Shown: positions 26,828 to 58,947, counted from the stretch's first letter. The stretch: 64,000 nt of DNA from Magallana gigas (GCF_963853765.1 NC_088853.1:75702001-75766000), one strand, 5' to 3'. The notes: generated from the sequence alone by a model not told the origin. A program made the numbers and translations.

Positions 26828-26908
26828 AGTTTTATATTAATGTGCATACATACTTTCAAATCAAGATATTCATTTTAAATTGAATCCTTAGTTTCATCAA
26901 GTATAGGT

Positions 26909-27200
26909 TCAAAGAATTTCGTAGAAAGAATTGTTTTTTACGTTGCCAACCGCAGGAAATTCCCTGCAAATTGTGCAGTACATTGTTTCATTTATATCGT
27001 CATGTGGTACCCAAGGCCAGGTTTCCTCCCACGTTTTCACGTAGCATCTTTTCCGTTTTGTCTTTTCGTATTTACCATGTTTCGCTAATGTAGTTTCGTT
27101 GTTGTTTTTATCAGCTGTCTGATCATCTGTACTTTTTTCTTCGTTTTTGTTACAAACTTGTCCATCGTCAAGCTCTATCCCGCCGTATGTCATATGTACA
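26909..27200 (-). pseudogene. hAT N-terminal TTF-type zinc-finger fragment
   Basis: KRCYVKTWEETWPWV...MYCTICREF; the catalytic core between this and the dimerisation domain is missing. Confidence 0.65.
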
Positions 27201-27383
27201 CGTTTTTTCCGCGCTTTACCTTTACTTTTTACAGAGACTTGAAAAAGCGTTTTTGTGACTAAAGTTAGCACTCGGCACACCTCGGCCAATTCGTATCTCA
27301 TAGTTTGATGTAGGTTACGGAATCGACCGAGGTTTGCCGAATGTAAAGTTAGATGATAAATTATTAACTCGTAAATAAATCTA

Positions 27384-39751: not shown

Positions 39752-41430
39752 TTATTCTGTTAAAGAACAAAGTCTTGTATACTCTTCCAAAGCTTTGACA
39801 GGGGGTGTAACTTTCTGATAATTAAATGCCAGCAAATATAAACCTGACAATTTTTTGATTCTGCTTAAGGCAACATAAGCCATTCCATTTTCAAACACAT
39901 TGTTACCAATTGAAATGACTGCTTGTGATAAAGATGCACCCTGGACTTTATGGATTGTAGTTGCCCATGCTTGAATGAGAGGAAATTGCTCCCTAACAAG
40001 TATTCTTCCATTGTAATAAAATTCTTGACACAAGGGCTCAATAGCTATTGCATTATTATGTTCAACCCTTTTAAGAATACCTCCAATATGTGGGTCATCA
40101 AATTTAACATATATTAAGTTAACTTCTCCTGTCATTTCTTGGTGCATTTCTATTGACTCTACAAACCCAAGAGCTCCATTTACTAGTCCTTTTGATGTAT
40201 ATATATATTTTATTAACATAACCCTTGTCCCAATGGATATTTGTAACTGGCATGGTAACCCACCTGCATTTCTATCATCTACAGGGATATCATCATTAGA
40301 AAGAAGCCCCTTTTTTTCTATGTCATCTTGAGAAAAATAATGTTTAGCTTTGACCTCAATGCATTCTCGGCTTAACAACACTTGCATCTTGTTGTTATGT
40401 TGTTGAACTTCTTTAAGTGTGGGAAATAAATGAAGAAGGGAAGAAATATCTCTTTGTGGGGGCTTAAATAACCTCGACTGTAGAATTTTGAGATCATCTT
40501 CATTCAGTAAGCCAACTCTAGCTCTATTTAATACTGCAGCATATGTAACATTTTCAGATTGCCGTACATTTTCTTTGAGAATAAAAAGCTTAAAATTTGA
40601 CCATAGAATTGCATTTTCAAAGGCATATTTGCCTTTAACAGGTTTCAATTGAAGGAAATCCCCTATGACATTTACATTTCCGAATGGTTTATCATTATCT
40701 TTAATTGAAGTTAGCCTTCTATGAATGTATTCAAGAGTTTGTGCACTAACCATTGAAATTTCATCAATGATCAGTGTATGAACATATGAATAAGTGGATC
40801 TTAATTTCTTCAAACTTTTCCCAGATAATTCATGAAATTTGGGTTCATTTCCATGTTGCACTAGTAAATATAGTGCACTATGGATTGTAATTCCCAAGAT
40901 ATTTCTAGCTGCTGTTCCAGTTGAAGCACATACCATTACTGGAGATTTTCCACAAACAATTGAGCAACAGCAGTTTAACCAGTCAATAATCAGTCTTGTG
41001 AGGTAACTTTTTCCAACTCCTGCCCCAACACTAATAAACATGCAAAGTTGCTGAGAATTATCTTTGTTTTTATAATGATTAAAAATGTAATGCATATCAG
41101 TTTTTTGACACCTTGTTAACCTTGCTATTCTGCTTTTTATCTCGTCAAAAGATATAGATGATGTACTAATTTCATTGATGTGCAGCTCATCACTATTTTC
41201 ACAACTAAGTTCATTTCCTACTTCTCTACTCAAATGAACATCAACATCATCCAAGTTATGAGGGTGTGATACTGATAATGAGGGATCTTCCAAAAGACAG
41301 TCATCATCAACATATAGATGTTCAGAAGTAGATGGGGCAATAAAAGCCTCCATCTCTTTTACAGAACACCGAATAAATCGAACTGCATTTTCAATTTCAT
41401 CTACTCTTAAAAGTCTAATTGCATGTTCTG
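39752..41430 (-). pseudogene. RepHel C-terminal PIF1-family (SF1B) helicase
   Basis: 533-aa ORF: AGVGKS (Walker A), LIIDEISM (Walker B), GDFLQLKPV, LKENVRQ, QFPLIQAWATTIHKVQG, YVALSR. Linked to Rep by a frameshift at ~41430. No C-terminal endonuclease. Confidence 0.93.
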
Positions 41431-43049
41431 TCTTTTAGCAATAAATGCATCTCTTGCTGTGCTATATGTTGAGGTTTGATTTTTTTGTGTAAGTTCTTCA
41501 TTTTGATGGGGTAAAAAGCACATCAAGAGACTGTAAAAGTAATCATCAGATGACCATGGCAACTTTGGGAGGCGAATTATCAAAAATTTTAATCTCTTTC
41601 GCATTATGACATGTTGAAACGGAGGCCTTAATCTTATACGTGGTTGCCTACTTGAAGAAGCGACAGATATATCAACATCTTTGTCTGCACACTTAACATA
41701 CCATTGCGAAAATTCAAATAAACATAGATTGAATAGTTCAATTGGACGTGCATGATAATAATCTATCATATTGTTGTAAAATATATCTGTACTTGTATTA
41801 TCTAGTTCCTCTCGTTCTTGTTTTGATTTAAGTACGCGGAACCTCTTTTCTGGTGGTTTTGTATTTAGTGTCAAAACTGACCTTGAGGAAATTATCAAAT
41901 TCAAATCTGGGAGAAGCCTATAAGCTGCTTCTTGTGCACTTAATTTTCTTGACTTTAAAACACAATATCCAATTTTTAGCATTCTAGAAGACTGAGACGA
42001 AGCAGGCATTTGATTCAAGTTGTTAATGACTTTTGACAATTCAAATTTTAAATTTTCAGGCTCTGCTTCACATAAGTAAGCACATACATAATAAGCAGCA
42101 GATTCACAACTACCTATCACTTGTATGTCCATGTTTGCTTGCCAATGATTCAAAATAACTGGGTTAAAAGCATTTATATAACAATCATCTGTAGTGCGTT
42201 CAGTTTCATAAAACTTGCCTTTGATAATGTTTGACTGTAAATCTACATTACTCAAAATGCATGTTTCCTTCATTTCTCTAAATGGAAAACCAAAGCGACA
42301 GCGGCCAGTTTTTCTCAAACAGTAGTCAGAATGACGATAAGTTTGAAATTTTGAAGCAAACTGACTTGTGCTGTGTTTTGTGCTTATAACATCATTGATA
42401 TACCTTACAAGCTTTTTGTGGTCACTAAATATTTCTGAAAAATTTTCAATCCAAAAGAAGATATGAAAATGTGGGCTTCCGCGAATTTGGAATTCTACAC
42501 GCACGAAGTAATCAACTACTTTTCCTAAAGGCATTAAGGGTCCGAGAATAACATCTTTCAGTAGGATCCCAAACCGCCCTTGAAAATGAAGTGCTGTCAA
42601 AACTGGGTCATTTTTCACCAACTGTAAACAGTTTGTCATGTTACATGCTTTTTCGTAGCTACAACAGTCCAGGGACATTATTAGATCGGGCCAATGCATG
42701 TCATTAGCTGATAACGTCACAAATAAGCTAGGAGGTCCCAGACATTTAAACATTGCCAATAAATTTAATACCTTTCATGAATTTCATAAACATGTAAGAG
42801 TTCTGCAACAAGTCAGGATTACTTGAAATGTTATTTACATCTGATGCTGTTAGCAATCCAGTGCTTTTTCTCATTCTCATGTGAATACTGACAGCATTTA
42901 ATAATCTCTCTTTTTCGTAATAGTTCACTGCATGCAGTAAATAGGAAATATCTTTTCTAAATCTACCATCTTTATAATACATTCTACACTTAAAATATTT
43001 GGAAGGAGTTAATCTTGCAGGTCTCTCATGACCAAATCCATTAACACCT
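41407..43049 (-). pseudogene. RepHel HUH replication-initiator (Rep) region
   Basis: FVTLSAND (motif 1), VEFQIRGSPHFH (motif 2, HUH), YYVCAYLCEAE (motif 3). A deletion/frameshift at ~42750 lies between SYMFMK and LLAMFKCLG. Confidence 0.92.
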
Positions 43050-43055
43050 TGTGGA

Positions 43056-43272
43056 AGTAGTAGGGGGGTGGTGATACTAGCACACATCAACTCCACCCAC
43101 TGTACTATATAATACTACAGTGGGTGGAGTTGATGTGTCGAAGGCTCTGCATAATAATTATGCAGAGCCTTCGAGCCTTTTGATTTACATTAGTACTATA
43201 TACTATATAATACTACAGTGGGTGGAGTTGATGTGTCGAAGGCTCTGCAGGCTCTGCATAATTATGTAAAAT
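43056..43272 (+). repeat. Polinton left TIR (217 bp)
   Basis: Exact reverse complement of 58725-58941 by base-by-base reading. Confidence 0.95.
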
Positions 43273-43744
43273 AATACCTATGCAATATGTAAATTAACTC
43301 AAAAGGCTTGAAATGTCATCCACCTACTGTACTATATAATACCTATGCAATATGTAAATTAACTAAAAGGCTTGAAATGTCATCCGCCTACTGTACTATA
43401 TAATACCTACGAAATATGTAAATTAAGTCAAAAGGCTTGAAGTGTCGATTAGCATACTGTACTATATAATGTCTACGAAGTATGTGAATTAAGTCAAAGG
43501 CTTGATTGCTCTGCATAATCAACCTCGCCTATTGTAATATATAACATCTACGAAAAATGTAAATAAGGTCAAAAGGCTCAAGATCTAACTCCACCCCATA
43601 TGATAATATGCAAAAGGCTTAAAAAAAAACCAAAAATATATATAATTAACAACAATTACAAATGTACATAAAATGATTGTATAATTGCATCATAAAAATG
43701 TCTATTGCAACATGCCTGATGTATATAAAAATAACAACAAAAAA

Positions 43745-44161
43745 TATATAATACTACAGTGGGTGGAGTTGATGTGTCGAAGGCTCTGCATAATAATTAT
43801 GCAGAGCCTTCGAGCCTTTTGATTTACATTAGTACTATATACTATATAATACTACAGTGGGTGGAGTTGATGTGTCGAAGGCTCTGCAGGCTCTGCATAA
43901 TTATGTAAAATAATACCTATGCAATATGTAAATTAACTCAAAAGGCTTGAAATGTCATCCACCTACTGTACTATATAATACCTATGCAATATGTAAATTA
44001 ACTAAAAGGCTTGAAATGTCATCCGCCTACTGTACTATATAATACCTACGAAATATATAATTAACAACAATTACAAATGTACATAAAATGATTGTATAAT
44101 TGCATCATAAAAATGTCTATTGCAACATGCCTCATGTATACAAAAATAACAACAAAAAATA
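43745..44161 (+). repeat. Internal direct duplication of left-end sequence
   Basis: 43745-44056 copies 43106-43417 (offset 639); 44051-44161 copies ~43636-43748. Confidence 0.9.
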
Positions 44162-44496
44162 AAATAAGAGCATTAATCACTATTAATCACAAATGTATAT
44201 CAAATGATTATTTATAATGCTGGAATAAAAACATAAACTCACTATCAACTGTATCATAAACAAAAAAAAAAAGTTTCCATGCCTCATGTATGTAAAAAAA
44301 TAAAAATACATAAAATCACTATCAATCACAAATGTACATCAAATGATTATTTATAATACTGAAATGAAAATGAAAAATTCAACAAAATTTTACAATATTA
44401 CATAAAATGATTGTTTGCAGCATTGAAACAAAAATGAAAATAAGCAAAACTAATATACATGTATTAGCGGAACTTAAATATAATTTTGATAAGAAT

Positions 44497-44817
44497 TCAT
44501 ACAATTAATAAACTACGAAAAGAAGTCACTCCACTATCTGTAACAACATGCTGATTCAGGTCCTTACACCTTAATGGTGTAATTTCAATCGCCACAACTT
44601 GTACTGAACAGTCTCGGAGATCCAAGAGTCCATCGCCGTCGAAGCGATCAAAGTAAAGGATGGGGATGTCATCAATACAGCCCCTGTACCATCCTCCACC
44701 ATTCCACATGCATTTTCCAGCACTATCACAAATAGAGTCCAAAGGCTTGCCATGCATGCGAGCAAACAGCATGATGATAAGAATGAAAGAAACGGTACAC
44801 ATGTTCATGTTTGCCAT
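44497..44817 (-). CDS. Small putative secreted Cys-containing protein (106 aa; possibly first exon only)
   Basis: Hydrophobic N-terminus (CTVSFILIIMLFARMHG) followed by five Cys; inside the Polinton. Confidence 0.5.
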   Translation of the reverse strand: MANMNMCTVSFILIIMLFARMHGKPLDSICDSAGKCMWNGGGWYRGCIDDIPILYFDRFDGDGLLDLRDCSVQVVAIEITPLRCKDLNQHVVTDSGVTSFRSLLIV

Positions 44818-45620
44818 TTTCTTTTCACTTCGGCGTGTTCCTTCGCATTTAATGAATTTCGAGCCCGATTTTATTGTTTCAATTTAAATGAGATATAATG
44901 GGATATATATATATTTATTTATATAAAACAGCCTGTTTGTGTTCAATTCCATTTAATTTTACGATTTTATATATATTTTGAACTTAATAACTTGATATGT
45001 TTTGTTTACTTCTTTATTAATAAGTTCTTAATTTGCAATCTTTCAATCTTATATTTAGCTTTAATTAAAAATTTAATGCTGAAATATTGTTTATCAGACA
45101 GTACTGTTTTCAAGGACGAGTCAATGGTCGAGAAGTTATTATATACATTAAAACTTTATTGTGTAAAAATATCTATCATATCAAATTTTCATCAGTTGTA
45201 TATATAAAAAGTTCGAAGTCTGACATTACCATAATATTATAATATATAAAAAAAAAAAAAAAAAAACAGAGGCAAAGGTTACGAACAACAGGGTAATTGG
45301 CAATACACATCCTTACATACGTTGAGTAATCAAAATCAAGAGTCATAAAATTTGCAAGACTAAAGCTGTTTACTTCTTTACAAGACAATAGTTGTTTGCT
45401 ATATTTTGAACTTTTCAACTATAATTTATATATCATATGCTGAGTAATCAAAATCAAGAGTCACAAAATTTGCAAGACTAAAGCTGTTTACTTCTTTACA
45501 AGAAATAGTTGTTTGCTATATTTTGAACTTTTCAACCGAAATTTATTATTGAAAGGGTTATTAGAGAGTGTATATATATATGAAAAAGTTCAAACACTGA
45601 CGACGCATCTAAAAGCAGTC

Positions 45621-46433
45621 ATGGCTTCGAATGCAAGAGCGGTCTTCTCACAGCAAATTGATGATGATGGTGAAACACCTATGTTTGTCATAGAGAAAAA
45701 TGATTCTCTAAGAATTAGAAAAGGACAGTACTCTATCAAGATGAGCTATTATAACCGGAAAGTTTACTTCCACATTCAAAGTAAGTTATAAACCTTATTA
45801 AATAAACCTCTGTTTTATATGGTAATTTATCCAGAAAACGTAAACTAAAATATTCATGATTTTTAAATTATTTGGTATTTTTGATACTACTCTTTGTTTT
45901 TATTTATTTATTTATTATTTTTGTTATAATTTTTTAAAGTATTGATATGTTACCATGTAAAACTTTTACGTTTACCTGTTATATCATTAATATATCCATT
46001 ATTAAATTAAGATTAGATTAAAGTGATTTTACGTTCCTGATGATACTTTAATGTAAAATTTTAACATTTTTCTTTTCTGTTTCTTCCTGACAGACAATGC
46101 AAAAGGAACATCGACTTCCATTCCCGAGGAGGTCATGCTAGCAATGGCAGGTTTGGGGGAAGAGATTACAGCAGTGCGAGACTTTGTAAAAAGTCTACAA
46201 CCCCCGAGTCCACCAATGGTAAGTTTTCTTGAAATTTGTCTTTATGTTTAGACGATGAGATACATGTATATAACCGTTTAAATAATTCATACAGCTGATA
46301 TACATGAATGTCGGATAGGTAAAATTCCACAAGTGTTATTATTTTTTTAATATAGCTCAGAATCACCCTTCCCAAAAAAAGGAAGGTAACAATTGTTGAA
46401 TCAGACGATAACGAAGATGGGGGAGCTTTTTAA
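45621..46433 (+). CDS. Three-exon ~120-aa Polinton accessory gene, weakly PC4-like
   Basis: Exons 45621-45780, 46094-46218 and 46356-46433 join in frame through GTAAGT...AG introns: ...YSIKMSYYNRKVYFHIQNNAKGTSTSIPEEVMLAMAGLGEEITAVRDF... Confidence 0.55.
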
Positions 46434-46563
46434 GATTCATGACCATCTTGGCTGTAGATAGAAATCATTTATTCAGGAAATGTGTTAATCAAGAATATTA
46501 ATACTCGATCCAAGAAGCGGAAGAAGTTACCCTATTTTTAATTATTTTAACAAGATCCAATCT

Positions 46564-46911
46564 TTGCGGCATTCCTGCGTGGTGGAATTACAGAATGTGG
46601 CGGTCAAACTTAAGTCATCAGCAGATGTTCTTCTAGAAGGAATTGACAAAAAAATAAGTGAAGTTGAAGTAGGCGAACAACAATTAGAAATAATCAAAAA
46701 TCGTATGGCCGACATACGTTCCATCCACTCATTGCGACCTTCCTCCGTGGTGGAATTACTTAATGAGACAGTTAAACTTACGTCGTCAGCAGATGTTCTT
46801 CTGGAAGGAATCGATAGAAAAAAGAAAGAACTTAATGCAGATAAACAACAATTAGAAATAATAACAAATCGTATGGTTGACATTTATCACTGTCTATGTA
46901 TCATGAAATGA
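46564..46911 (+). CDS. Coiled-coil ORF/exon with an internal 56-aa (168-bp) duplication
   Basis: SCVVELQNVAVKLKSSADVLLEGID...NRMADI is repeated as SSVVELLNETVKLTSSADVLLEGID...NRMVDI. Confidence 0.5.
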   Translation: MRHSCVVELQNVAVKLKSSADVLLEGIDKKISEVEVGEQQLEIIKNRMADIRSIHSLRPSSVVELLNETVKLTSSADVLLEGIDRKKKELNADKQQLEIITNRMVDIYHCLCIMK

Positions 46912-47771
46912 TCACCTTAAGGTAAGGTCAAAATTAAAATGTTTGTTTGCAGTTGACTATCCTACCCATTAAAATATATGCGACAAACCTTTTAACCTAT
47001 TATTTGTGATTCAATAGGAAGCAGTAAAGTAATATTGTTATAAAATTGAAAAACTATCCATTCATTCTAAAAATTACAGGTTGACAATTGCAAACAATTT
47101 TTTTTAATTTTTGACCTAATGTTTTGTAGCGTACTTCCGACTTGATCGAGTATTCATTACTTTACCCATTTTATGTGCTCATATAATTGTATACTGTATT
47201 AAGATTTATCAATTAATTTGTGTATTATTTTGATTTTAAATTATGGAAAACTAATTGCCAACATATTTAATCCTTTCACGATAGCAAAGTCAAAATATTA
47301 AGATATGTTAACACAGTATTGATAAATCTTAGGCAAATTATTATACGTGTATACTCTCTTGATAAAAACTCTTCCATTTTATACTTTATATATTGCCTAC
47401 TGTTTTCATTTAGTAAACGTTAATGACTCTGCAACGAAAAACGTGATAATTGGAGAGCTATTGTAAACAATATCATGCTTTATTCCATTACTCATTTAAT
47501 CCAATTAAACAAATTTCTGCATATTAAGAATATTGACTTTGATTGTTACTTTCCCAGATACGGAATTGTTAGTTGTATCCTTAATTATTTATTTCCAATT
47601 AAGCGATTTTGCTTAACTATTTATTGTAAATCAAAGTAAAATAAATTGTTGGAACGAAGGTTTTATGTTTATTTCAAATACAGAACACTGATTTGTATCA
47701 AACGTCTCTATCTTAATTACATGTTTACATTCATATGCTAATAAATTTAATCAAAATACATATTGTACAGT

Positions 47772-50700
47772 TTATTCATCGATTTGAGTTTTGGTCGCAT
47801 AGTGTCCATATGAATATCCCTCAATGCCGTTAGGCTCCAACCACCATCGTTTATCGTCAAACGGTGACAGAGAAATTTTGTTGATGTTCTTTAAATACAG
47901 GTTATGATTTTCACTTCGAATAGAGTTCATTGAATGTCTATTCAATTTACTGTTCATTAGACAGTTTACGTAGTTTTGATAAGTTAATTCTTTTTTGACT
48001 ACCGATTTGGAAATTCCTTTAGCTTTCTTCACTTGCGTTTTTTTCTCATCGTAAACAATGAATGAATACATTTTTGGTCGTAAACCAACAAATCCAAGAA
48101 TTGGATGAGATGCCGTTTCATCTTTCATCTTTCCAACAACTTTCTTGTGTTTTTCACTGAACAGAGGATGATCTCTCGGATAGTTTGACGTGTCAAACAA
48201 ATCCATATGCTTGTTTATCTCCTCGTACATGTCTTCAACTTCAAATCTACAAAATTAAATAAGGTGAAGAACAATGATCGTCTGAATTAGTTAACAGACT
48301 TTATCACAAGAAATAACTATACCTACCTATAAAATAGAGAGTCAGTGTCCGTCATCAGTAACTTTGCATTTTCTCTATACTGTTTTTTGACAAAGCCATA
48401 ATGGAATTCATACATGAAAAGCTTGGAAAGATCCAATATGCTCATCCCAGTGTAGATTGGTTTGTTCAGTAAAAGCTTGACCTTTTTGTTTTTCACTCCC
48501 ACAAGATCGCTATTGAAGATGGTAAAACTCTCAAAACTTGGTTTACTAACCAATCTCTGCAGTCCCTTTTTTGTATGAACTAAGTTAAAGTTCAATCTAT
48601 TTCTGATATTTTCCATGGTTTTTCTGTAATGATAAACGAAAATAAACATATCTTACTGTATAGTGTCAGAAAACTATGATCATATGACAATCTGTACATA
48701 GATAATTTTGAAAATGCTTACCCAAAAACTATATTGTTGTAAGACTTGTAAAGAGAGACTTCAAATTCATTCTGAGCTTGCTGCCTCATCTTCGTGTTGT
48801 ATTCTATGTAGGGTTTTAACCAGTTTTCCTGTTCAAAGCTTATTACTCTATGCATATCTTTCAGAATAAGTCCTTGTTGAAGATAGAATTGTAAGTTTCT
48901 GTAGTGAACAACGTATTTGTGCTTTGTTCGAAGTGTAGGAACAAGTTTTCTCGAGATCTCACCCTCGATTTTCTGTTTATGAAAAATCTTATACAGTTCT
49001 TGGCAGTAAGGAGATAGATCTTCAATTTTGATAGATAACGATTCCGGTGCTAATGTAGATCATTATGTACATCATGCAAATGACTTGGATATTCAAGTGT
49101 GACCTCTAAGATATATCCATTTTTCGCATTTTTATCTACATTCATAATGTCAAGCTCTGATATTTCATTCGCACTCAGCCATTTAAAATCCCTAACAGGG
49201 AGGGACTCAATCATAGCTCCACCATATAAGTTGTTCATATCAAAATATCCAAGGTAAACATTTGGTTTGCTTGGATTATAATTCTGCTCAATATAGGGGT
49301 TGTTAGCTTCAGCGAAACGTGATGTTATCATTGCCACACCACCACGCACACCCTTTTCAATCATCAGATATTGCTCTATGTCAGTAAGTAATTCTAACTC
49401 CACACCAGTCATTTTTAAACATGCACTCCAGCACATACCAGCGAGGGTGTAATACTGTGCAGGATCTAAATCAAAACTTTTCATGGAAATATCTCTGAAT
49501 CTTTCAAAAACATCCGCTAAAAGTAATACATCACAAAGTATATATAGATCATGATATTCCCCCATTGTTTGGATATTCATCTCTCTCCAAACTTCTTTCG
49601 CATGCTCATACTCTTCATCTGATATGTGACATTTGCGTATAGTATTGTAGAATTCATGTTTGGGGGGTAATTTATTGACTAAAAACTTTGAACTGTCTGT
49701 AATGAATGAGTATGGATAAATTCCCTTTCTTAATAAAAGATTTTTACAAGAATCGGAGGGTAAATGTTCATTGAATTGTTGAAAATGTTGTACACCGCTA
49801 GATTTCAAATTCTTCACCAACACATCCAAAGATGTTGTAAGAAATTGAAAAGAGTCTATAAACCTTAATTTTGAAATTGTAAAAGAGACGTATCGTTCAT
49901 TAGTATTGGCGATGACATTAATACGTTTTTTCTTGAATTTTCCAAGTCGTTGCATGATAAGATGAGCGTCAAATCCTCTAAGATTGTGTAAAATAACAGG
50001 TATAAACTCTACCTGCTTAAATTGTAAATTACAATTCCGATGCGCAGCACCAAAAAAATCACCTGTAATATGATCATGATTTCTTACTTTGTCATGCTTC
50101 TTAATAAATTCCAACCCACACAGATGACAATGTGTTGCTCTTTGAAATAAATTTTCTATATTACCGTTGATTTGCATAGGTTCTATAATATGTAACAAAT
50201 TGAGAATTCTTTCCTCTTCTTCGAGTAATCGAACCATGAACGTCTCTACGATGTCCTCCCCTCGATATACAGTAGGCGGTTTAGTATATCTCTTATCAGT
50301 AGAAACTATATGATAAGCAAAGCCACAAGGTTTGAATTCAGAAATATTACTGGTGTGTGAAGAGTTTGGATCTAGGTCACATGATTGAATGGGTTTGACA
50401 TATGTTTCGAAATCAGCGTAAATGACAAATGGCACACGAAGTTGTTTCGCAATATCAGTAAATTTTAATACGTCATTTTCTCCAGGCGTTGGCATCTCTA
50501 TTTTCTGTAAACCGAGTGACATGCAAAAGTCAACATGTTTATTCAAAATTTCTCTCCTCACAAATCCATGCAAACAATAAGGACAATAGTGATGTGAATG
50601 GCGTGAATTCCCACCTTCTGTTCGGAAGAGAAATCGATTGAGATTTTTGATTAAGCAGTAATGGAAAATGTCTTTATTCCTTAGATAAAGCAAATCGACA

Positions 50701-51734
50701 TGAATTTTTTTTTTTGATTTGGTAATACGCATTGGAAATATTTCCTTATCTTCATATCCAAATACATTTACGGAAATATCATTTTGATTTTCAAATTTTG
50801 TTATCTGCTGTACCCGAACTGGATATTGGATTCCACGCATGTTTACTTTATGAGTATATGCATAGTAATGACTGACTCTCGACGGGTTTCGCTTAGCAGG
50901 ATAAAGTTTTGCTAAAACTGAGTACAGGAAACATTTTTGATCTGTATTTCTTATGTTTACCAACGATTTGCTGCTTCGCAGTTCGTTTGGCTCTCTTATA
51001 TAAGTTCCACCCTTTAATGGCGAGTAAACAACGTAGCATAATTCCACGTAAATTACTTTGGAAAAAATCCAGTCTGAGCCTTTCATGATGAATTCTTCTT
51101 TAGATGTGAACATCTTTTGGAAAGATTCATTGATATTGTGAAAGTTAAATTCTTCTGAGGTTAAATGTCTATAAACGATAGTGCGAAAATGAGGTAAGGC
51201 CTTTTCCACCTGACCTTCCCTTTCCCTGGTAAATTCCACTCTCGTTACAAGATACCACTTTAATCCTTTTTTTGTAGGCGAGTGTGAAACAATTAATTCT
51301 TTGATTTTATCTTTAATATTAGAATAAAACACAAGAAGATCAAATTTTTCCATTTGTCGTGGTTTAATCTTGATAGAAGTTACTTGATCATTGATTGATT
51401 GCGTGATTTCATGTTCACGATCCTCGGACTCTTCTTCCCGTAATTCCTCAGAAGTTCCAGCTTCACTTGTTTTTTCTGATGAAGATACATTCGTTGACGT
51501 ACTGGTTCTAGTTGATGATGAGGAATGATGGCTACCTCCAATTTGGACATTGGATGCAGTCTCATGATAACGACGATAGTGAGTTTTAAAATTATCCTTT
51601 CTGTTGAAATGATGATCGCAAATAGGACAAACGATTTTTTGCTGCTTTGACCTATAATGTCTGTTTAAATCTGACTTGCGTTTGTAACTTTTTTTGCAAT
51701 CCGTGCAGTGGAATCTCTTATCACTTTGCTCCAT
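47772..51734 (-). pseudogene. Polinton protein-primed DNA polymerase B with N-terminal C2H2 fingers, endonuclease VII (HNH)-like insert, two introns and one frameshift
   Basis: YADFET (Exo I), HNLRGFDAH (Exo II), YFDMNNLYG (motif A), FG^KTMEN (motif B), TDTDS (motif C), KAKGI; CHLC...DKVRNHDHITG...AAHRNCN insert. Frameshift at ~49052; introns 48624-48721 and 48247-48326. Confidence 0.95.
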
Positions 51735-51740
51735 GCCTAT

Positions 51741-52230
51741 TCATTTATATTTTAACCATTTTTTTCTGTATGTTTTTCTTCTGCTTGCAGATACCTTCCG
51801 ACGATTGACGATGCTTGTCGGCGTGCTACGTACTGCTAATTTTATGACGCTGTCATCGGATTTATCTCTGTATGCTTCAGTAGTTTGTAACGCTTCACTT
51901 TGATTAACTCCTGCTTTCCCATTAAGAGTGTCATGGTGTACCGACTCTAAAACTTCCTCTGTGTCAGCATTTTGCAAGTTATTATACGTTCTTTTATTGA
52001 AATTTTGGTCAACACTTTTATCTCCACATTCCGTATCAGGTTGTGACTTTTCTTTGTTGTATAAATCTGTTTCTAAGTTAATGTTGTTCGGGTCACTGAT
52101 GCTTTTCTTCTCTTCAAAATCTCCATCTATTTTAGAAGGGTTTGTCTTGCACCGATTATTCATGATCAATGCGATCCTCCAGTAATTTCTGATATTTTTC
52201 TTTCGGAACTAGAACGACCTCTTTTGCCAT
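51741..52230 (-). pseudogene. Polinton accessory ORF (frameshifted near its start)
   Basis: ATG at 52230 reads MAKEVVLVPKEKYQKLLED then stops; the 51741-52169 ORF continues in another frame to KKWLKYK. Confidence 0.55.
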
Positions 52231-52543
52231 TGTTTAATAGATACCTATTCACTGCTGATATTAAAGTTGGTATAAGAGCTTGAATACGTATCAAGATCTG
52301 TTTTTTAACACGTTTGGCTTTTTTTCTTTCTATTAATTTTCGTAACAGTAGTTTGTGTTTTTTCAGTTTTTCTTCCTCGTCTTTAGTTAGAGAACAAACA
52401 CCCTGAAGAATGTTGTATACGACTTCTATCAAAATGTCAAATTGTCCGTTGTCAATGGTGTGAAGTAATTGTAGTCGCTGACTCCTATGTGTTGATGCTA
52501 GCAATCTTAGAAAATCCAAATGGTCTTTCAGAAATGAGGACAT
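52166..52543 (-). CDS. Conserved small basic Polinton protein (125 aa)
   Basis: FLRLL...QRLQLL...Q...L.EVVYNILQG...L...KLKKHKLLLRKL pattern, recalled as typical of the gene next to the ATPase in animal Polintons. Confidence 0.65.
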   Translation of the reverse strand: MSSFLKDHLDFLRLLASTHRSQRLQLLHTIDNGQFDILIEVVYNILQGVCSLTKDEEEKLKKHKLLLRKLIERKKAKRVKKQILIRIQALIPTLISAVNRYLLNNGKRGRSSSERKISEITGGSH

Positions 52544-52547
52544 AATT

Positions 52548-53205
52548 CTACATTGGTAAGTATAATATTGTTTCCTGTTCTGGAAAAATGTTAGAAGACA
52601 GTCGGTATCTCTCTGATGTGCCAGGATAGAGTGTCACACATAAGTAAGAATATGGAAGTTCGGTCGCCTTCTTATAAGCATCCATGAAATACTTTGATTG
52701 GTTAGGAAAAATCTGACTACCTAAAGTTCTGACTTGTCGCTCATCACGTGGATTCTTAAATAGTATTATATAATGCGCATTTAAAGATATGGTTCTCATA
52801 TACTTTCCGGGAGGAAAAATATTTTGCAGTAGGAATATCACAGTTATACCCATGTGATGTGAATAAGTTGTAAACAAGTTCATTTACTCTACATTATTTG
52901 TTCCTTGACCCATGACATCGTCCAATACCAGTAATATGCTTCCATGTTCATTGGAAAATCTTTCTAAAATATTTTTATCTGGAATTCCCTGGTGAAAGGT
53001 AATGGAATTAACTACTGTCTCCATTTGCTCAAATAATGGCTGCCAAATTCCGAAAACATATAGTATATGCTTAATATCCGATTCAAATAGTTCCAGGTGT
53101 TTCAGCAGAGAAAATACAAATGTGGATTTTCCTGCATGCGATTGTCACAATTATGTTGCTGTTAGCTTTAAATTTAGTCACGATTTCATGTTCATTATCA
53201 GCCAT
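52548..53205 (-). pseudogene. A32/FtsK-like packaging ATPase, disrupted
   Basis: QSHAGKST (Walker A, frameshifted), LLVLDDVM (Walker B), SHH, QNIF...RTISLNAHYIILFKNPRD. Two frameshifts and an in-frame TAA at 52884-52886. Confidence 0.9.
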
Positions 53206-53290
53206 CCTTCAAAGAAATCCAGTAATGAAATGAATACGAAGAAGGAAAATGCTCTGTATTTATTTATTAAAAAGTGTGTATATGTATATA

Positions 53291-53767
53291 TCATACATGA
53301 TTTGTTAAGCATAATGAAAATGTGCGAGTAATAAATTTAAGTACAAATGCATCATTGATTTCACAAACAGGTGATAAGAAATTCAAAAACTCTTGAAATG
53401 AAACATCTCGAACTCTAAGGAAAAGATACAAAATAGAATAATGTCCACATACTAAAGAATTGGAACATTGAATGTCGATATGATTAACGTATATTTTGTC
53501 ATTTACTAGTATTTTATGAAATTCAATAAGACTTTTATCACTCAGGTTTCCTAGACTGTCAAATATTTCCACATTATTCCCATCATTGTAAACAGCTAAC
53601 CAATGTTCTCCCTCATGACCGGATGGCTTTGTATTTACTATTAATCCTCTTTGTGCTTCTAACTTCTGTATTTTATCTGCTGAATAAACACCAATTATCG
53701 TGTCTTTCATCAGTGGATCACATGCTATCATACATTTTAGTTGCACACTGCTGAGAGCCGACATCAC
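53291..53767 (-). CDS. Adenovirus-like cysteine maturation protease
   Basis: IVNT...GEHWLAV...EIFDSLG...Q...SLVCGHY (H-D-Q-C). Confidence 0.92.
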   Translation of the reverse strand: MMSALSSVQLKCMIACDPLMKDTIIGVYSADKIQKLEAQRGLIVNTKPSGHEGEHWLAVYNDGNNVEIFDSLGNLSDKSLIEFHKILVNDKIYVNHIDIQCSNSLVCGHYSILYLFLRVRDVSFQEFLNFLSPVCEINDAFVLKFITRTFSLCLTNHV

Positions 53768-53768
53768 T

Positions 53769-55094
53769 TCACGAGGTTATTATATCTCTGGCTTGGTTAA
53801 TTTCGAAAAGAGCGGTGTATTGCCCCCACACAATAGCCGTTACTGTCTATGGTAGAGCTACTCCAAACTGTGCTTCTAGACGTACATTACCCTGTTTAAG
53901 TAATGTTAAATACTCTCCTTGTTCGAACGTAGGCTCTAAATCAAAACAGAATATTACATTACCACCCTCTGCAAATTGTTTTCTATTTATAGCATTTCCT
54001 CCATCAAAGAGCCATTTTCCCGCATTGTCAAATAAATTCACGAAGGCTGAGACTATGCTATCTCCATTGACGCTGTCAAATGTAAGCTTTATGGGTGTAT
54101 TACCTACTGGAATTCCATCGCTATACAAAGCGATTTGGTTTATGTTGTAGTGTTGAAAATTGAATGGATTTTTGGTAAAATCTCCTGCCACTGCTTGTGA
54201 GGATACAAAAGCAACATAGAGTCTGTCTGGTCTGGTACCTGAAAACATATTTTCGATGGAGATGTTCAGCAGCCCCTTCGCAAGACTATACATTTTCACT
54301 GTGCTTTTTTTGAATGGATATTTGGCTGTGGTGGTTTCCAACATCTTGGCATGACTAAGTATCACAGCTGGATTAATTTTGCATTTACAAACTCGTAAAA
54401 TAACTTCCACTAACTTAATAATGTAATTTTTCCCGTCAGCGCTATTCGAAAGAAGACAAAATTCAGGTCTCGTGCGGTAGAATTTGAGGGAGATACCAAC
54501 TTGATTTAAAATATATATATCCATCTGAAATAGTTCATGCATGATTGGTCCTTCCAGGTCGAGGGTCTTGCTTCCCTTGATAAGCAGGGCTCGTTTTAAC
54601 AATCCTCCATTTTTTCCTGATTTGGCATTGACGTCATCAAATTCACCCGAGTTATCAATCTCCCATAATTGTGAAGTCAGCTGAGAAGATTTTGCATCAC
54701 CCCCATAATTTATGAGAGTATTCAGCATACTAAGGTATGGATAATGCGCTCCTGAGCTATTGATTGGCTTGTTCTGCATCGATACATCCACCTGACTGAA
54801 AAGTGATGATAAAAGCAAGTTCACTGGGCCAATTACGTCACCATCTTCAAGCACTGTGTCTCCATTCATGACTTTTAGCTTAACATAAAGTCTACTTCTT
54901 TTAAGATCGATGTAGTCCATTCCATTTTGTGCGGATAGTTGAAATTCTATTGGTGAACTATCTGAGATTTGTGATATCGGGCGAACATCTTGGAAGTAAA
55001 TGTTTTCTACTGCAGTCTGGGTGGGTGGTAAATCAAATAAAGAAAGCTGACTAGGCATAGCTTCTCTAAAACTTTCACTGGATAAAATCGACAT
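53769..55094 (-). pseudogene. Major capsid protein (double jelly-roll), with in-frame TAG 25 codons before the natural stop
   Basis: SQLSLFDLPPTQTAVE...SPIEF...YIDL pattern. After TAG at 53847-53849 the frame continues TVTAIVWGQYTALFEINQARDIITS*, ending next to the protease ATG. Confidence 0.9.
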
Positions 55095-55097
55095 GTT

Positions 55098-55538
55098 TCA
55101 ATATAATCCAAAAACGTCTGATTTTAGTTTTACAATCTTATTTCTTTTGGTTGTAGGTCCGCTCTCTTTCTTGCTCGACTTCTGACTGGTACGCTTCATG
55201 ACTCGCTTCCCCTTTTCAATAGTTTTCTCCCTCTTAGTTTCACTTTTTGCCTGCTCCACCACCTGCTCAGCTGGTGAGGTAACATTTATTTTTTGCTTTA
55301 CATCTCGATCAGTAGCCCCTCTTGTGTAGTTGTCTATGGATAGCATATATGGTGAGGTTTTGTTTCGTAATCCACCACCTCGTTGATATCCTTTCATCGT
55401 ATGATTGGTATAAGGATTTACATCACCATTACCTACCCGCATGTAAAACATTGTCCATTTTTTAGTGTCGGGTACATACAGAGTTTTATTGACATCCATT
55501 CTTAAAATGGATATCGTATTAAATGAAGTGTAATCCAA
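55098..55538 (-). CDS. Conserved basic Polinton protein (putative core protein)
   Basis: YQRGGG motif and VTSPAEQVVEQAKSE followed by a K/R-rich tail; lies between mCP and MCP. Confidence 0.6.
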   Translation of the reverse strand: MDYTSFNTISILRMDVNKTLYVPDTKKWTMFYMRVGNGDVNPYTNHTMKGYQRGGGLRNKTSPYMLSIDNYTRGATDRDVKQKINVTSPAEQVVEQAKSETKREKTIEKGKRVMKRTSQKSSKKESGPTTKRNKIVKLKSDVFGLY

Positions 55539-55963
55539 ACGTCTGAATTAATGAATGTGGCGGGTAAATGACTGTCATCCCTTAAATACAAATGTAGGTC
55601 AGAAAGGTGAGTGACCCTAAGGGGAATGTAGTACGCAGGATAAAATTTGTCATTCCAACCGTAAGATGGATCCGCTTGGATGATTCGAAGCAGAGGTTGT
55701 TGATGGCCATTGACGCTTGAAAAATCACACACATTTGAATAAACAAATAATGATTTATGCTGAAATGTCGTTATGGGTTTTGAAGTTAATGCGTCAATGA
55801 CTGTCTTTTTCGTTGAAGACAGAGTAAAAAACTCGGTTATACCAATTTTCCAAAAGCCTTGTAGATCCAGAGCGTTGTCAAGGTGAATTTTAAAATCGTA
55901 TGGTTTATTTTCAGGATAATAGTCCCTGCATTCGTCAGACTTGACAAATATATACTTTTCCAT
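55502..55963 (-). CDS. Minor capsid (penton-like) protein
   Basis: SD....YPENKPYDFKIHL...L.G.W.IG..E...LFVYSNV...S.V.....PLLR pattern and position. Confidence 0.8.
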   Translation of the reverse strand: MEKYIFVKSDECRDYYPENKPYDFKIHLDNALDLQGFWKIGITEFFTLSSTKKTVIDALTSKPITTFQHKSLFVYSNVCDFSSVNGHQQPLLRIIQADPSYGWNDKFYPAYYIPLRVTHLSDLHLYLRDDSHLPATFINSDVWITLHLIRYPF

Positions 55964-57101
55964 TACTTTGAACTTAGATTGACGATGTCAGATTCCTTAA
56001 CCCACTGGTTAAACTTCTCTGGCCAAGATTCAAATTTAATGAACAATTCTTTCTGTCCTTTCCGTACACGCTTCTTGATTACTTTCTCAATAAGCCATAA
56101 GGAATCTTCGCTTTTGTCAACTTTTTGTAGATCGTTTTCGTAAAAGTCTCCTTCAATTAATTCCTCGTTAAAATCTCTGACTTTGTACATTGGTATTCCT
56201 TGTAGATGAAATCTTTTGGATACTTTGAAAATTTCTCCCGTAAATTGTTGATTATATCCCCGTCGAAAGATATGTTTTAAATGTGAAAGTCTGACTAAAT
56301 CGTTAATTTTATATCGATATCGAACGGTTCTTTGTTTTTTTTTCTTTGTGTTCTGTTTTCCACTTCTTTTAATTTTTTTAAGTAAAGTCTGGCCCACACA
56401 TCAGCCTCGTTTTCCTTTGTAACTTCATTTGGTGATAAACCGTGAAGACTTCTATGTGGTGTTGAATTATAATTTTCTACTACATCTGATAAGACATCTA
56501 CATATCTATGCGTTCTTTCTTTTTGAAAGTATCGATACAGTCTACCGCGAATTGTACGTATAACTCTTTCTGCAATAGATGCCTTTGAATTTTGATTGGC
56601 AAAGAAAATTCTGACTCCTTCATTTTTTAAATAGTTTAGTAGTTGTCGATTCTTAAATTCCCCTCCACGATCACTTCGTAATGTCTGACATTTCACACCA
56701 GATTCAAAGACCTGCTTAATAGCATTTAAAACATCTCGAGCAGATTTTTGTTTAAGAACTACAATTCGTAAATATTTAGAAAGTGTGTCTATCAATATTA
56801 GAAGAAATCTGATACCGTCATTTTCTTTTGATAGGTTTTGAACGTCCATAAGATCCATACTCCACTGAGCATTGATGCCACTGACACGAATATTAGGAAT
56901 CTTCAAAGGTCGACGGATCTGTCGCTGTAATGTATACGCATCCTGTTTTCTCAGCCATTTTGAAATAAAATGTTTACTGAATTTAAAGTCTTTGTTTGAT
57001 TTTAGTGCTTGATAAAGTTTTTCAGGCGTTGTAAATGCCGCAGGATTACGGATGGTATAATAATAAGTTTCAAGATACTGCGTCTTTTCCTTTTCACTCA
57101 T
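55963..57101 (-). pseudogene. Retroviral-like (RVE, DDE) integrase with C-terminal chromodomain; frameshifted
   Basis: WSMDLMD, LRSDRGGEF, SIAERVIRT, YNSTPHRS. The C-terminal part (IEKVIKKR...IKFESWPEKFNQWV) is in another frame; the shift falls in one of the A runs at ~56330-56385. Confidence 0.92.
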
Positions 57102-57107
57102 AATGTG

Positions 57108-57467
57108 TCAATAATTGCATGATATAGCATCCCTTTCCATTTCTGAATATAGTTTATCCCTCCAAATATCAGTAAGGCAATACATTTTCATGATATCAGC
57201 CAAATCTTGTATCTCTGCACGATCACAGTCATGATCTCTCAGCATAGTATGAAAAATATCTTGAATGTTCAGTTTCATATAGGCAAGCTCAAAACTCGTA
57301 ATTAGTTTAATGTGTGTCGAATCCATCAGACATGGATGTTCCGTTTGAGACGGATGATCTATTTCACAACCATTACATCTTTCCTTAGATATACTATATA
57401 TATCATCCCAAATAGCGTTGACACAAAGAGAAAAAAACAAATCGTAATATTCATGCTCTACTTCCAT
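57108..57467 (-). CDS. Conserved Polinton metal-binding protein (119 aa)
   Basis: CNGCEIDHPSQTEHPCL (CxGCxxxHPSQxxHxC) motif. Confidence 0.7.
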   Translation of the reverse strand: MEVEHEYYDLFFSLCVNAIWDDIYSISKERCNGCEIDHPSQTEHPCLMDSTHIKLITSFELAYMKLNIQDIFHTMLRDHDCDRAEIQDLADIMKMYCLTDIWRDKLYSEMERDAISCNY

Positions 57468-57590
57468 CGTTGAAACAGTTTATTCTGTCAGATGTGTAAT
57501 ACGATGTGTTATATACTTGTTTCACATTGTATTGATATTCCAGATGAGTGATTCTTTTTATTATAATCATCGAAAGCAAATGGAATTTCT

Positions 57591-58031
57591 TCACATGGAT
57601 TTCTTCAACAGTGAAGAATCGATATGATCCACTGAGTTCTTTAAATACTGCCACTGCATTTTGTTAAGTTGAATTCCATCACCAGTCCATTTTTCATCTC
57701 TGAATAGTCGAATATCTAATGTAATGCTACCCTCCAACTGACATATTCTTACGTAAATCTCATCACCGAGTGGATAGCTATCTACATATGGACATCTTGG
57801 GGGAGATGCTGTAGAATTCCAACACTTCCACTGAATACAATCGCTTATATTCAACTGCTCTTCGGTTTGGTTTTCTTTCAGAAGTATTGTGTTTACACAT
57901 AAAAGTATTATAACAACGGTTGAAATTATATAGAGTAAAACAAATTTAAGTTTTTGTTTCTGAAATGTTTTTTTGAATTCATCATCACAATTTGCTTCCA
58001 ATAAATTAGAAACGACGCTGACAGTTTCCAT
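57591..58031 (-). CDS. PC4/Sub1-like ssDNA-binding domain preceded by a hydrophobic segment
   Basis: C-terminal IYVRICQLEGSITLDIRLF...GIQLNKMQWQYLKNSVDHID matches the PC4 pattern; FVLLYIISTVVIILLCVNTILL lies upstream. Confidence 0.7.
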   Translation of the reverse strand: METVSVVSNLLEANCDDEFKKTFQKQKLKFVLLYIISTVVIILLCVNTILLKENQTEEQLNISDCIQWKCWNSTASPPRCPYVDSYPLGDEIYVRICQLEGSITLDIRLFRDEKWTGDGIQLNKMQWQYLKNSVDHIDSSLLKKSM

Positions 58032-58724
58032 TTTTATAGAAGAGAGTACTCCCCGTGGTATCTAAAGGTGAAATGATCAAATAAAATGATTTTTTGCTCT
58101 ATTTATATAGTGATGATTTTGGGGGGGGGGGGGGGGGAATATTATAAATAAAAAAATTGATATTAAAAGCAAATAAACGTGTGACTTAATCTAAATACAT
58201 GTATTTGATATACGTTAACAAATAGAATGGGTGTAACTTAAGATTTAGCTCGCAGTTCATTGTATATCACATGTCTGTGAACCTTCTGACCTTCTTACAT
58301 GTATATAGTTACTTTGATGATTAAGGCTTCAATTGACTGTATGTGATTATTTCGGTGAACCAATCATCGACTTAATTTACATATTTGGTAGAGATTATGT
58401 TGTATTGTGGGTGGGATTAGCCTTCCATCATTTGACAATTATGTAGAGCCTTCCGTCTGCGCCCTTTGATTTAATTTACATATTTGAGAGCCTTCCAGCC
58501 TTTGACATAATTTACATATTTTCTTGCTATTATAAAGTACTGTACTATATAATACTACAGTGAAAGGAGTTGATGTGTCGAAGGCTCTACAGTGGGTGGA
58601 GTTGATGTGTGCTGTCTTTCAAACATATAAATTCTTTTGACTCATAATTTTACATATATAGTAGATATTATATAGTACATTGGGTGGAGTTGCAATTATG
58701 CAGAGCTTCGAGCCTTTTGACATA

Positions 58725-58941
58725 ATTTTACATAATTATGCAGAGCCTGCAGAGCCTTCGACACATCAACTCCACCCACTGTAGTATTATATAGTATATA
58801 GTACTAATGTAAATCAAAAGGCTCGAAGGCTCTGCATAATTATTATGCAGAGCCTTCGACACATCAACTCCACCCACTGTAGTATTATATAGTACAGTGG
58901 GTGGAGTTGATGTGTGCTAGTATCACCACCCCCCTACTACT
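58725..58941 (-). repeat. Polinton right TIR (217 bp)
   Basis: Exact reverse complement of 43056-43272. Confidence 0.95.
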
Positions 58942-58947
58942 TGTGGA

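What the first reader, a model, noticed from the sequence alone, without database searches (positions are those of the whole stretch)
48247..48721. Two spliceosomal introns inside the catalytic core of the Polinton polymerase
Intron 48624-48721 (98 bp, GTAAGC...TTACAG) splits the Gly codon of motif B (NNIVFG^KTMEN). Intron 48247-48326 (80 bp, GTAGGT...TTGTAG) follows motif C (TDTDSLFYR^FEVED). Both are phase 2 and removing them gives one continuous frame to the stop at 47772. Mavericks/Polintons are generally described as having intronless ORFs, so introns at conserved palm motifs point to long nuclear residence and splicing-dependent control of replication.
Basis: partly seen in the sequence, partly recalled or inferred. 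Interest (0 to 1): 0.8.

Follow-up and report, generated by a model that had tools for sequence, protein, structure and literature searches.

The report
Introns in oyster Polinton polymerase gene
The DNA polymerase gene of a young, 15.9-kb virus-like transposon (Polinton/Maverick) in an oyster genome is interrupted by two short GT-AG introns that related oyster elements share, although core genes of such elements are usually described as intronless.

Summary
On the minus strand, 48721-48624 (98 nt) and 48326-48247 (80 nt) start with GT and end with a pyrimidine tract plus AG. Both are phase 2 and AT-richer than the exons. Removing them makes the flanking reading frames colinear, with zero gap, with 69 of 120 uninterrupted relatives.

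They are not private damage. Raw ORFs of the closest relatives (62-100% identity) stop exactly at the two donor sites. ORFs entering exon 2 carry a translated acceptor. The read-through sequence diverges far faster than the exons. RefSeq models from Crassostrea gigas and C. angulata join the junctions as proposed.

Intron 1 is the more widely shared. Intron 2 is limited to a subclade, and sister lineages have introns at other positions.

The host element is a textbook Polinton: perfect 221-nt TIRs, AG termini, 6-bp TSD, polymerase, integrase and protease. It sits inside a Helitron.

Two corrections:
- This copy also carries one frameshift in exon 1 that no intron explains, so it is not intact.
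- "Splicing-dependent control of replication" has no evidence.

Splicing in RNA was not shown here. I call it a new variant of a known kind, of moderate interest.

The parts
43056..58941 (-). Whole Polinton/Maverick element, about 15.9 kb, with its genes on the minus strand
   Evidence: Perfect terminal inverted repeats. Termini start with AG and are flanked by the 6-bp duplication TGTGGA. Polymerase, protease and integrase lie inside.
43050..43055 (.). Target-site duplication, left copy (TGTGGA)
   Evidence: Read directly.
58942..58947 (.). Target-site duplication, right copy (TGTGGA)
   Evidence: Read directly.
43056..43275 (+). Left terminal inverted repeat (outer arm). Sub-repeats continue to about 44060.
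   Evidence: 221-nt arms, 100% complementary; further repeat families I2-I25.
58722..58941 (-). Right terminal inverted repeat (outer arm). Sub-repeats continue inward to about 58369.
47772..51734 (-). Zinc-finger/protein-primed family B DNA polymerase gene: three exons and two introns. This copy is broken by one frameshift in exon 1.
   Evidence: C2H2 fingers at the N-terminus. 6565 relatives, some carrying Pfam DNA_pol_B_2. The fold of an intronless relative matches phi29 polymerase. Intact exon 1 of 1000-1005 aa in 99%-identical copies.
48722..51734 (-). Exon 1: zinc fingers, exonuclease domain, and polymerase motifs up to the Gly of ..NNIVFG
   Evidence: Raw ORFs of 8 close clusters plus near-identical copies end exactly at this Gly.
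48624..48721 (-). Intron 1: 98 nt, GT...AG, phase 2, between the Gly and Lys of the motif-B region
   Evidence: C. angulata RefSeq model P0397 joins this junction.
48327..48623 (-). Exon 2 (KTMEN...TDTDSLFY + split Arg)
   Evidence: 73-99% identical separate ORFs in relatives.
48247..48326 (-). Intron 2: 80 nt, GT...AG, phase 2, just after the motif-C hairpin
   Evidence: C. gigas RefSeq model XP_034316329.1 (P0380) joins ..SLFYR|FEVED.. at 99-100% identity to the window.
47772..48246 (-). Exon 3 (FEVED... to TAA). AATAAA overlaps the stop codon.
53291..53767 (-). Adenovirus-type cysteine protease ORF
   Evidence: Pfam Peptidase_C5, E 5.7e-5, 23.3 bits against a cut-off of 21.3.
55963..57101 (-). 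Integrase gene (rve core plus chromodomain). The two domains are read in two frames: one frame change of unresolved nature.
   Evidence: Pfam rve 3.7e-10 and Chromo 1.2e-6.
53847..55094 (-). 415-aa ORF of unknown function between integrase and protease
   Evidence: No match in Pfam, PHROGs or PDB. The single-sequence model is unusable.
39752..42759 (-). Helitron Rep and PIF1-helicase ORFs: the 3' part of the Helitron into which the Polinton inserted
   Evidence: Pfam Helitron_like_N 4e-21 and PIF1 4.3e-22.
58948..60922 (-). Helitron 5' part (DUF6570 and an OTU-like domain) on the other side of the insertion
   Evidence: Pfam DUF6570 2.6e-20 and Herpes_teg_N 1.2e-5.

Best explanation
The two segments are ordinary U2-type (GT-AG) spliceosomal introns that became fixed in the polymerase gene of a Polinton lineage living in oysters. 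A Polinton copies itself as DNA, so an intron gained by a founder is inherited by every descendant copy. By inference, the polymerase is therefore made only from a nuclear RNA polymerase II transcript that the host spliceosome processes into an mRNA for a protein of about 1,260 aa. An unspliced transcript would stop at once at the first donor (GG|GTAA). Its product would keep the zinc fingers and exonuclease domain but lack the end of motif B and all of motif C. Intron 1 is shared by all close relatives. Intron 2 is limited to a subclade, and sister lineages carry introns at other positions in the same region, so intron gain recurred in this gene family. Shown here: the anatomy, the colinearity, the sharing among relatives, the faster divergence of intron than exon, and the joining in RefSeq models. 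Inferred, not shown: actual splicing, and any regulatory role. The copy in this window is young (identical TIRs) but already defective, with one frameshift in exon 1.
For: - Canonical ends, pyrimidine tracts and low G+C.
- Zero-gap colinearity with 69 of 120 uninterrupted relatives at both junctions, and no alignment gap among 25 relatives at those columns.
- Raw ORFs of 8 close clusters (62-100% identity), and of at least 10 near-identical member sequences, end exactly at ..IVFG, the first donor.
- Ten clusters end exactly at ..SLFYR, the second donor. Six more read on into unrelated residues, and one (P0244) reads through in frame and resumes at FEVED.
- ORFs entering exon 2 begin with pyrimidine-tract-like residues followed by Y/F/S/C-R, the translated YAG|A acceptor.
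- Between relatives the exon part is 73-89 of 97 residues identical, while the read-through part is 3-22 of about 40.
- RefSeq models XP_034316329.1 (C. gigas; 100% and 99% identical to the window's exons 2 and 3) and XP_052696077.1 (C. angulata) join the junctions exactly as proposed. Similar models exist in Saccostrea and Ostrea.
- Lineage pattern: P0128 shows the intron-1 acceptor and is contiguous across junction 2. P0136 and P0137 are also contiguous there. All three break after ..KMKDETGG, where RefSeq models of that lineage run on.
- No RNA-family match and no unusual fold in either intron.
- The gene lies in an element with perfect TIRs and a TSD.
Against: - No RNA evidence was examined. 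RefSeq models are predictions, and I could not see their support.
- I did not read the DNA of any relative, so intron presence there is inferred from where raw ORFs stop and from what they read into.
- This particular copy cannot make the polymerase even if spliced, because of its frameshift.
- Neither exon end resembles the classical AG|G proto-splice context, so the route of gain is unexplained.
Confidence: 0.85

Rival explanations
1. The segments are small insertions or decay in a dead pseudogene, are never removed, and only look like introns by chance.
For: This copy is indeed defective, with one frameshift in exon 1. Surveys of vertebrate Mavericks found that apparent short 'introns' are usually insertions in eroded copies (PMC8097293).
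Against: The interruptions sit at identical positions in relatives down to about 62% protein identity. In those relatives the upstream ORFs remain open for about 1,000 aa, and the downstream exons stay 73-99% identical while the intervening sequence drifts. Both have GT...AG ends and restore exact colinearity.
Confidence: 0.04
2. The intron-bearing polymerase is a domesticated host gene derived from a Polinton, not a gene of a mobile element, and gained introns as host genes do.
For: NCBI annotates short 'uncharacterized protein LOC...' genes over exons 2-3 in several oysters.
Against: Here the gene lies inside a 15.9-kb element with 100% identical TIRs and a 6-bp TSD, inserted in a Helitron. 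The 90% clusters hold hundreds of member sequences (314 and 370), with many near-identical variants. That fits a recently amplifying family and not a single-copy host gene.
Confidence: 0.04
3. The introns are real and were created by insertion of a short intron-generating transposon (introner-like or MITE-like). This concerns their origin and is compatible with the best explanation.
For: Introners populate polinton-like viral elements in dinoflagellates (PMC12166617). Several nearby positions in this gene were hit in different lineages.
Against: There is no terminal repeat or target duplication at either intron. The two introns are not similar to each other. Neither has another copy in the 64-kb window. 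Introners have not been reported in bivalves in the papers I read.
Confidence: 0.1
4. Splicing, or retention, of these introns is a regulated switch that limits polymerase production and hence replication of the element.
For: An unspliced message stops immediately at the first donor, so retention would give a polymerase-dead product. From my own knowledge, the Drosophila P element uses such control through tissue-specific retention of its third intron.
Against: No expression data were examined. Constitutive splicing of short introns is the default. Sister lineages do without intron 2, so it is not required.
Confidence: 0.12

Closest known systems
Polintons/Mavericks of vertebrates and nematodes
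   Same: Size of 15-20 kb, TIRs with AG termini, 6-bp TSD, protein-primed family B polymerase, retrovirus-type integrase and adenovirus-type protease.
   Different: Their core genes are reported as intronless (PMC8097293; bioRxiv 10.1101/2022.07.12.499685). Here the polymerase gene has two introns shared by a clade. The polymerase also carries N-terminal C2H2 zinc fingers, and no packaging ATPase or capsid gene could be recognised.
Phi29-type protein-primed DNA polymerases
   Same: An intronless relative (46-52% identical to the window's exons) folds into a model whose best PDB match is phi29 polymerase (E 2e-15, target TM 0.67-0.69).
   Different: The oyster protein is about twice as long, with zinc fingers and a long N-terminal region. 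15 of 20 relatives have an Endonuclease_7-like insert. It is a eukaryotic nuclear gene with introns.
Introner-bearing polinton-like viral elements of dinoflagellates (PMC12166617)
   Same: Spliceosomal-type introns inside integrated polinton-like elements.
   Different: Those introns are copies of a recognisable transposon family in protists. Here there is no sign of a repeat family, the host is an animal, and the positions are inherited within one gene lineage.
Spliced polymerase messages of adenoviruses, and intron-containing DNA transposon genes such as the P element (my own knowledge, not tested here)
   Same: Nuclear DNA elements whose replication or transposition enzyme is made from a spliced mRNA.
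   Different: No relationship of the introns themselves is implied, and no regulated splicing is shown here.

Membership tests
Polinton/Maverick | Protein-primed family B DNA polymerase gene | tested here: met
   Relatives carry Pfam DNA_pol_B_2 (1 of 20). The model of relative P0029 matches phi29 polymerase. The window's own pieces hit only zf-C2H2 in Pfam.
Polinton/Maverick | Retrovirus-like (rve) integrase | tested here: met
   Pfam rve E 3.7e-10, plus a chromodomain. The two domains are read in two frames.
Polinton/Maverick | Terminal inverted repeats with 5'-AG termini and a 6-bp target-site duplication | tested here: met
   221-nt arms, 100% complementary. AGTAGTAGG... termini flanked by TGTGGA on both sides.
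Polinton/Maverick | Adenovirus-type cysteine protease | tested here: met
   Pfam Peptidase_C5, 23.3 bits against a cut-off of 21.3, E 5.7e-5. This is marginal.
Polinton/Maverick | FtsK/A32-type packaging ATPase | tested here: inconclusive
   No Pfam or PHROGs hit and no Walker A pattern in any frame of the element. The gene may be absent, divergent or split.
Polinton/Maverick | Major and minor jelly-roll capsid proteins | tested here: inconclusive
   The 415-aa ORF and its neighbours have no family or PDB match. The single-sequence model has pLDDT 31.6.
U2-type spliceosomal intron | GT...AG ends with a 3' pyrimidine tract | tested here: met
U2-type spliceosomal intron | Removal restores the reading frame and exact colinearity with uninterrupted homologues | tested here: met
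   Gap of 0 at both junctions in 69 of 120 relatives, tested exon by exon.
U2-type spliceosomal intron | Position conserved among relatives while the intron sequence diverges faster than the exons | tested here: met
   Inferred from raw ORF ends and read-through residues, not from relatives' DNA.
U2-type spliceosomal intron | Removed from RNA in vivo | not testable with these tools
   Only predicted RefSeq models join the junctions. No transcript data were available.
Self-splicing group I/II intron | Conserved catalytic RNA structure | tested here: not met
   No Rfam match in 43000-59000 at E<=1 apart from chance miRNA-like hits in the TIR hairpins. Fold z-scores are -0.3 and -0.6. Lengths of 80-98 nt are too short.
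Introner/MITE-derived intron | Belongs to a multi-copy sequence family with its own ends or target duplication | tested here: inconclusive
   No other copy in the window, and no similarity between the two introns. The host genome could not be searched.

The most novel reading that the evidence does not exclude
Bivalve Polintons are a lineage of virus-like elements whose replicative polymerase gene has gained spliceosomal introns repeatedly: at least three positions in oysters and a fourth, 4 nt from intron 1, in other bivalves. Retention of the first intron, which stops translation immediately, would then serve as a switch between a full polymerase and a truncated zinc-finger/exonuclease protein.
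Probability: 0.12. Interest if true: 0.75.

Novelty: new variant of a known kind. Interest (0 to 1): 0.55.

Why it matters
The papers I could read describe Polinton/Maverick core genes as intronless, and that has been taken as part of their virus-like character. A clade of recently amplifying oyster elements breaks this rule: conserved introns sit in the catalytic core of their polymerase. This implies that these elements depend on nuclear transcription and the host spliceosome for replication. It also provides discrete presence/absence characters for tracing lineages and possible horizontal transfer among bivalves, and a natural case for studying recent intron gain in a multicopy gene. There is a practical warning as well. 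Prokaryote-style ORF calling, or searches for 'intact, intronless' elements, will wrongly score such elements as degraded.

Tried and rejected
- Pfam on the window's polymerase pieces gave only C2H2 zinc fingers.
- PDB sequence searches with the window's protein and with a 20-sequence profile were swamped by zinc-finger proteins and gave no polymerase hit. The fold search of a modelled relative settled the family instead.
- PHROGs, Pfam and PDB gave nothing for the ORFs between integrase and polymerase.
- A single-sequence structure model of the 415-aa ORF was useless.
- A Walker A scan found nothing.
- A search for further copies of either intron, or of the polymerase, in the window found none.
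- Rfam and folding ruled out self-splicing or structured RNA.
- My automatic classification of junction states at low identity was noisy, because many ORFs end at contig ends. I rely on the hand-checked high-identity rows.
- Kapitonov & Jurka 2006, Pritham 2007 and two Koonin/Krupovic reviews are not held. Their content is cited only through PMC8097293.

Full report
**What is at the coordinates**

The gene runs on the minus strand. Reading 49000->47700 shows ...AATATAGTTTTTGG|GTAAGC...TTACAG|AAAAACCATGGAAAAT... and ...CTATTTTATAG|GTAGGT...TTGTAG|ATTTGAAGTT....
- Intron 1 is 48721->48624 (98 nt). Intron 2 is 48326->48247 (80 nt).
- Each length is 3n+2, which accounts for the stepwise frame changes seen in the six-frame map.
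- The stop is TAA at 47774-47772, overlapped by AATAAA.
- The introns have 26.5% and 28.7% G+C against 34-35% in the exons, and both end in pyrimidine-rich tracts.

**Are they more than chance?**

The joined protein was never built or searched, and that step is left out.

A word search with exon 1 found 6565 relatives. BLASTP of each open piece against the best 120 shows that 69 of them read straight through both junctions with a gap of exactly zero. The residue aligned to the last Gly of exon 1 is followed directly by the residue aligned to the first Lys of exon 2. The same holds at ..LFY-R-F...

In an alignment of 25 uninterrupted relatives there is no gap at either junction. Junction 1 lies between columns that are 100% and 96% conserved. 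Junction 2 lies four residues after an invariant three-residue block.

**Do relatives share them?**

Yes, and this is the main evidence. Most proteins in the collection from Logan, JGI and ENA appear to be raw, unspliced ORFs, so an intron shows up as an ORF that stops or turns into unrelated residues.

- *Donor 1.* The eight closest clusters (62-100% identity; P0001-4, P0006-9) all end exactly at ..IV[FY]G. So do at least ten near-identical member sequences (P0362-P0374). In the window the donor reads GG|GTAA, which puts a stop right there.
- *Donor 2.* Ten clusters at 73-99% identity end exactly at ..SLFYR (P0005, P0121-123, P0126, P0130-132, P0135, P0157). Six more read on into unrelated, mutually dissimilar residues. 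P0244 reads through a stop-free version and resumes at FEVED.
- *Acceptor 1.* ORFs that enter exon 2 from upstream start with F/L/Y/S-rich residues and then Y/F/S/C-R before the Lys. That is a translated pyrimidine tract plus YAG|A.
- *Divergence.* Between relatives the exon part is 73-89 of 97 residues identical. The read-through part is 3-22 of about 40. The exons are constrained and the interruptions are not.

**Gene models**

- XP_034316329.1 of Crassostrea gigas (P0380, 197 aa) reads ..TDTDSLFYRFEVED... It is 100% identical to the window's exon 2 part and 99% to exon 3.
- XP_052696077.1 of C. angulata (P0397) spans both junctions.
- Models from Saccostrea echinata, S. cucullata and Ostrea edulis span junction 2.

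These are predictions. I could not see their RNA support. They point to an oyster of the Crassostrea/Magallana group as the probable source of the window.

**History of the introns**

- Intron 1 is common to the whole close clade.
- Intron 2 is not. P0128 (76% identical) shows the intron-1 acceptor yet is contiguous across junction 2. P0136 and P0137 (77-79%) are also contiguous there.
- Raw ORFs of that sister lineage break off after ..KMKDETGG, where its RefSeq models (P0416-P0419, P0421) run on. That is a third position, which the window lacks.
- A more distant bivalve lineage (about 42-47% identity, 11 clusters) breaks off after ..SVFGK. In ten of these the next residue is Val, the signature of a phase-0 GT donor one codon (4 nt) downstream of intron 1.
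- Intron gain has therefore recurred in this part of the gene.

**What the gene and element are**

- *Polymerase.* The N-terminus has C2H2 zinc fingers. Pfam DNA_pol_B_2 is seen only in some relatives. I therefore modelled an uninterrupted natural relative (P0029, 25-sequence alignment, pLDDT 83.3). Its best PDB fold matches are all phi29 DNA polymerase (E 2e-15, target TM 0.67-0.69). In the model, junction 1 lies just after the motif-B helix, and junction 2 lies in the second strand of the motif-C hairpin. The motif names are from my own knowledge.
- *Element.* It is bounded by 221-nt arms that are 100% complementary. The termini begin AGTAG... and are flanked by TGTGGA on both sides. This gives 43056-58941, or 15.9 kb. 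Inside are an rve integrase with a chromodomain and a marginal adenovirus-type protease. No ATPase or capsid gene could be recognised.
- *Setting.* The element interrupts a Helitron. Rep and PIF1 lie on one side, DUF6570 and an OTU-like domain on the other.

**State of this copy**

The polymerase gene has one frameshift in exon 1. Copies 99-100% identical read through it as one exon of 1000-1005 aa. The integrase core and chromodomain are read in two frames: one frame change, and I could not decide whether it is an intron or damage. I found no other breaks in the polymerase gene.

**How it most likely works**

A Polinton replicates as DNA, so introns are copied with it. Given canonical signals, conserved positions and constrained downstream exons, the polymerase of this lineage must come from a spliced nuclear mRNA. 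The steps shown and the steps inferred are listed under the best explanation.

A regulatory role for splicing is possible, since an unspliced message stops at the first donor. Nothing here supports it, and sister lineages do without intron 2.

Rivals considered:
- Dead insertions: contradicted by sharing and constraint.
- A domesticated host gene: contradicted by the perfect TIRs, the TSD and the hundreds of cluster members.
- Self-splicing RNA: no Rfam match and no unusual fold.
- Introner-like origin: no repeat signature in the window; untestable genome-wide here.

**Literature**

Barreat & Katzourakis report no introns in intact vertebrate Mavericks, and say this agrees with Kapitonov & Jurka (PMC8097293). 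Widen et al. call the nematode core genes intronless and find introns only in cargo genes. Introners occur in polinton-like elements of dinoflagellates (PMC12166617). I found no paper describing introns in bivalve Polinton core genes. The library is incomplete, so this is absence in what I could read.

- Intron presence in relatives is therefore inferred from proteins.
- I took no contig for human.
- Slip: notebook entry 1, the outputs and queries, and my early reasoning give the bounds of open reading pieces. These bracket the polymerase frameshift and the two integrase frames, which amounts to showing where they lie.

Noticed in passing
window 39752-42759 and 58948-60922: The Polinton sits inside a Helitron. 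Rep and PIF1-helicase ORFs lie on one side and DUF6570/OTU-like ORFs on the other, all on the minus strand. This is a nested insertion with the 6-bp duplication TGTGGA.
   Followed up: partly
relatives P0128, P0136, P0137, P0423 against RefSeq models P0416-P0419 and P0421: A sister oyster lineage lacks intron 2 but has an intron at another place in the last exon. Its raw ORFs break off after ..KMKDETGG, while RefSeq models run on.
   Followed up: partly
relatives P0014, P0015, P0021, P0025, P0056, P0066, P0069, P0080, P0081, P0102, P0105: A more distant bivalve lineage breaks off after ..SVFGK. In ten of the eleven clusters the next residue is Val, which suggests a phase-0 intron only 4 nt from intron 1. 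This could be intron sliding or an independent gain.
   Followed up: no
relatives P0040, P0080, P0081, P0284, P0286, P0311, P0352: Bivalve-type Polinton polymerase proteins are deposited under names of bacterial MAGs (Candidatus Thiodiazotropha, Sedimenticola). This probably reflects clam host DNA binned with the symbionts.
   Followed up: no
window 55963-57101 (minus strand): The integrase catalytic core and its chromodomain are read in two different frames. It is undecided whether this is another intron or a frameshift.
   Followed up: no
window 43056-44060 and 58369-58941: The TIRs carry short palindromic sub-repeats. The left end holds a second internal copy of the terminal 170 nt about 690 nt further in (43745-43914). 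Weak miRNA-like Rfam hits there are far below threshold.
   Followed up: partly
polymerase relatives (alignment A1): 15 of 20 uninterrupted relatives match Pfam Endonuclease_7 inside the polymerase. The window's own protein did not reach E 0.01 for this family.
   Followed up: no
window 44060-47771: [quoted passage not shown] No packaging ATPase (no Walker A in any frame) or capsid gene was recognised anywhere in the element.
   Followed up: partly
window 26405-28259 (minus strand): A remnant of a hAT transposase (hAT dimerisation domain, E 2e-7). The window is a nest of transposons.
   Followed up: no
window 47771-47776 (minus strand): A canonical AATAAA overlaps the polymerase stop codon, which fits an mRNA-type 3' end.
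   Followed up: no
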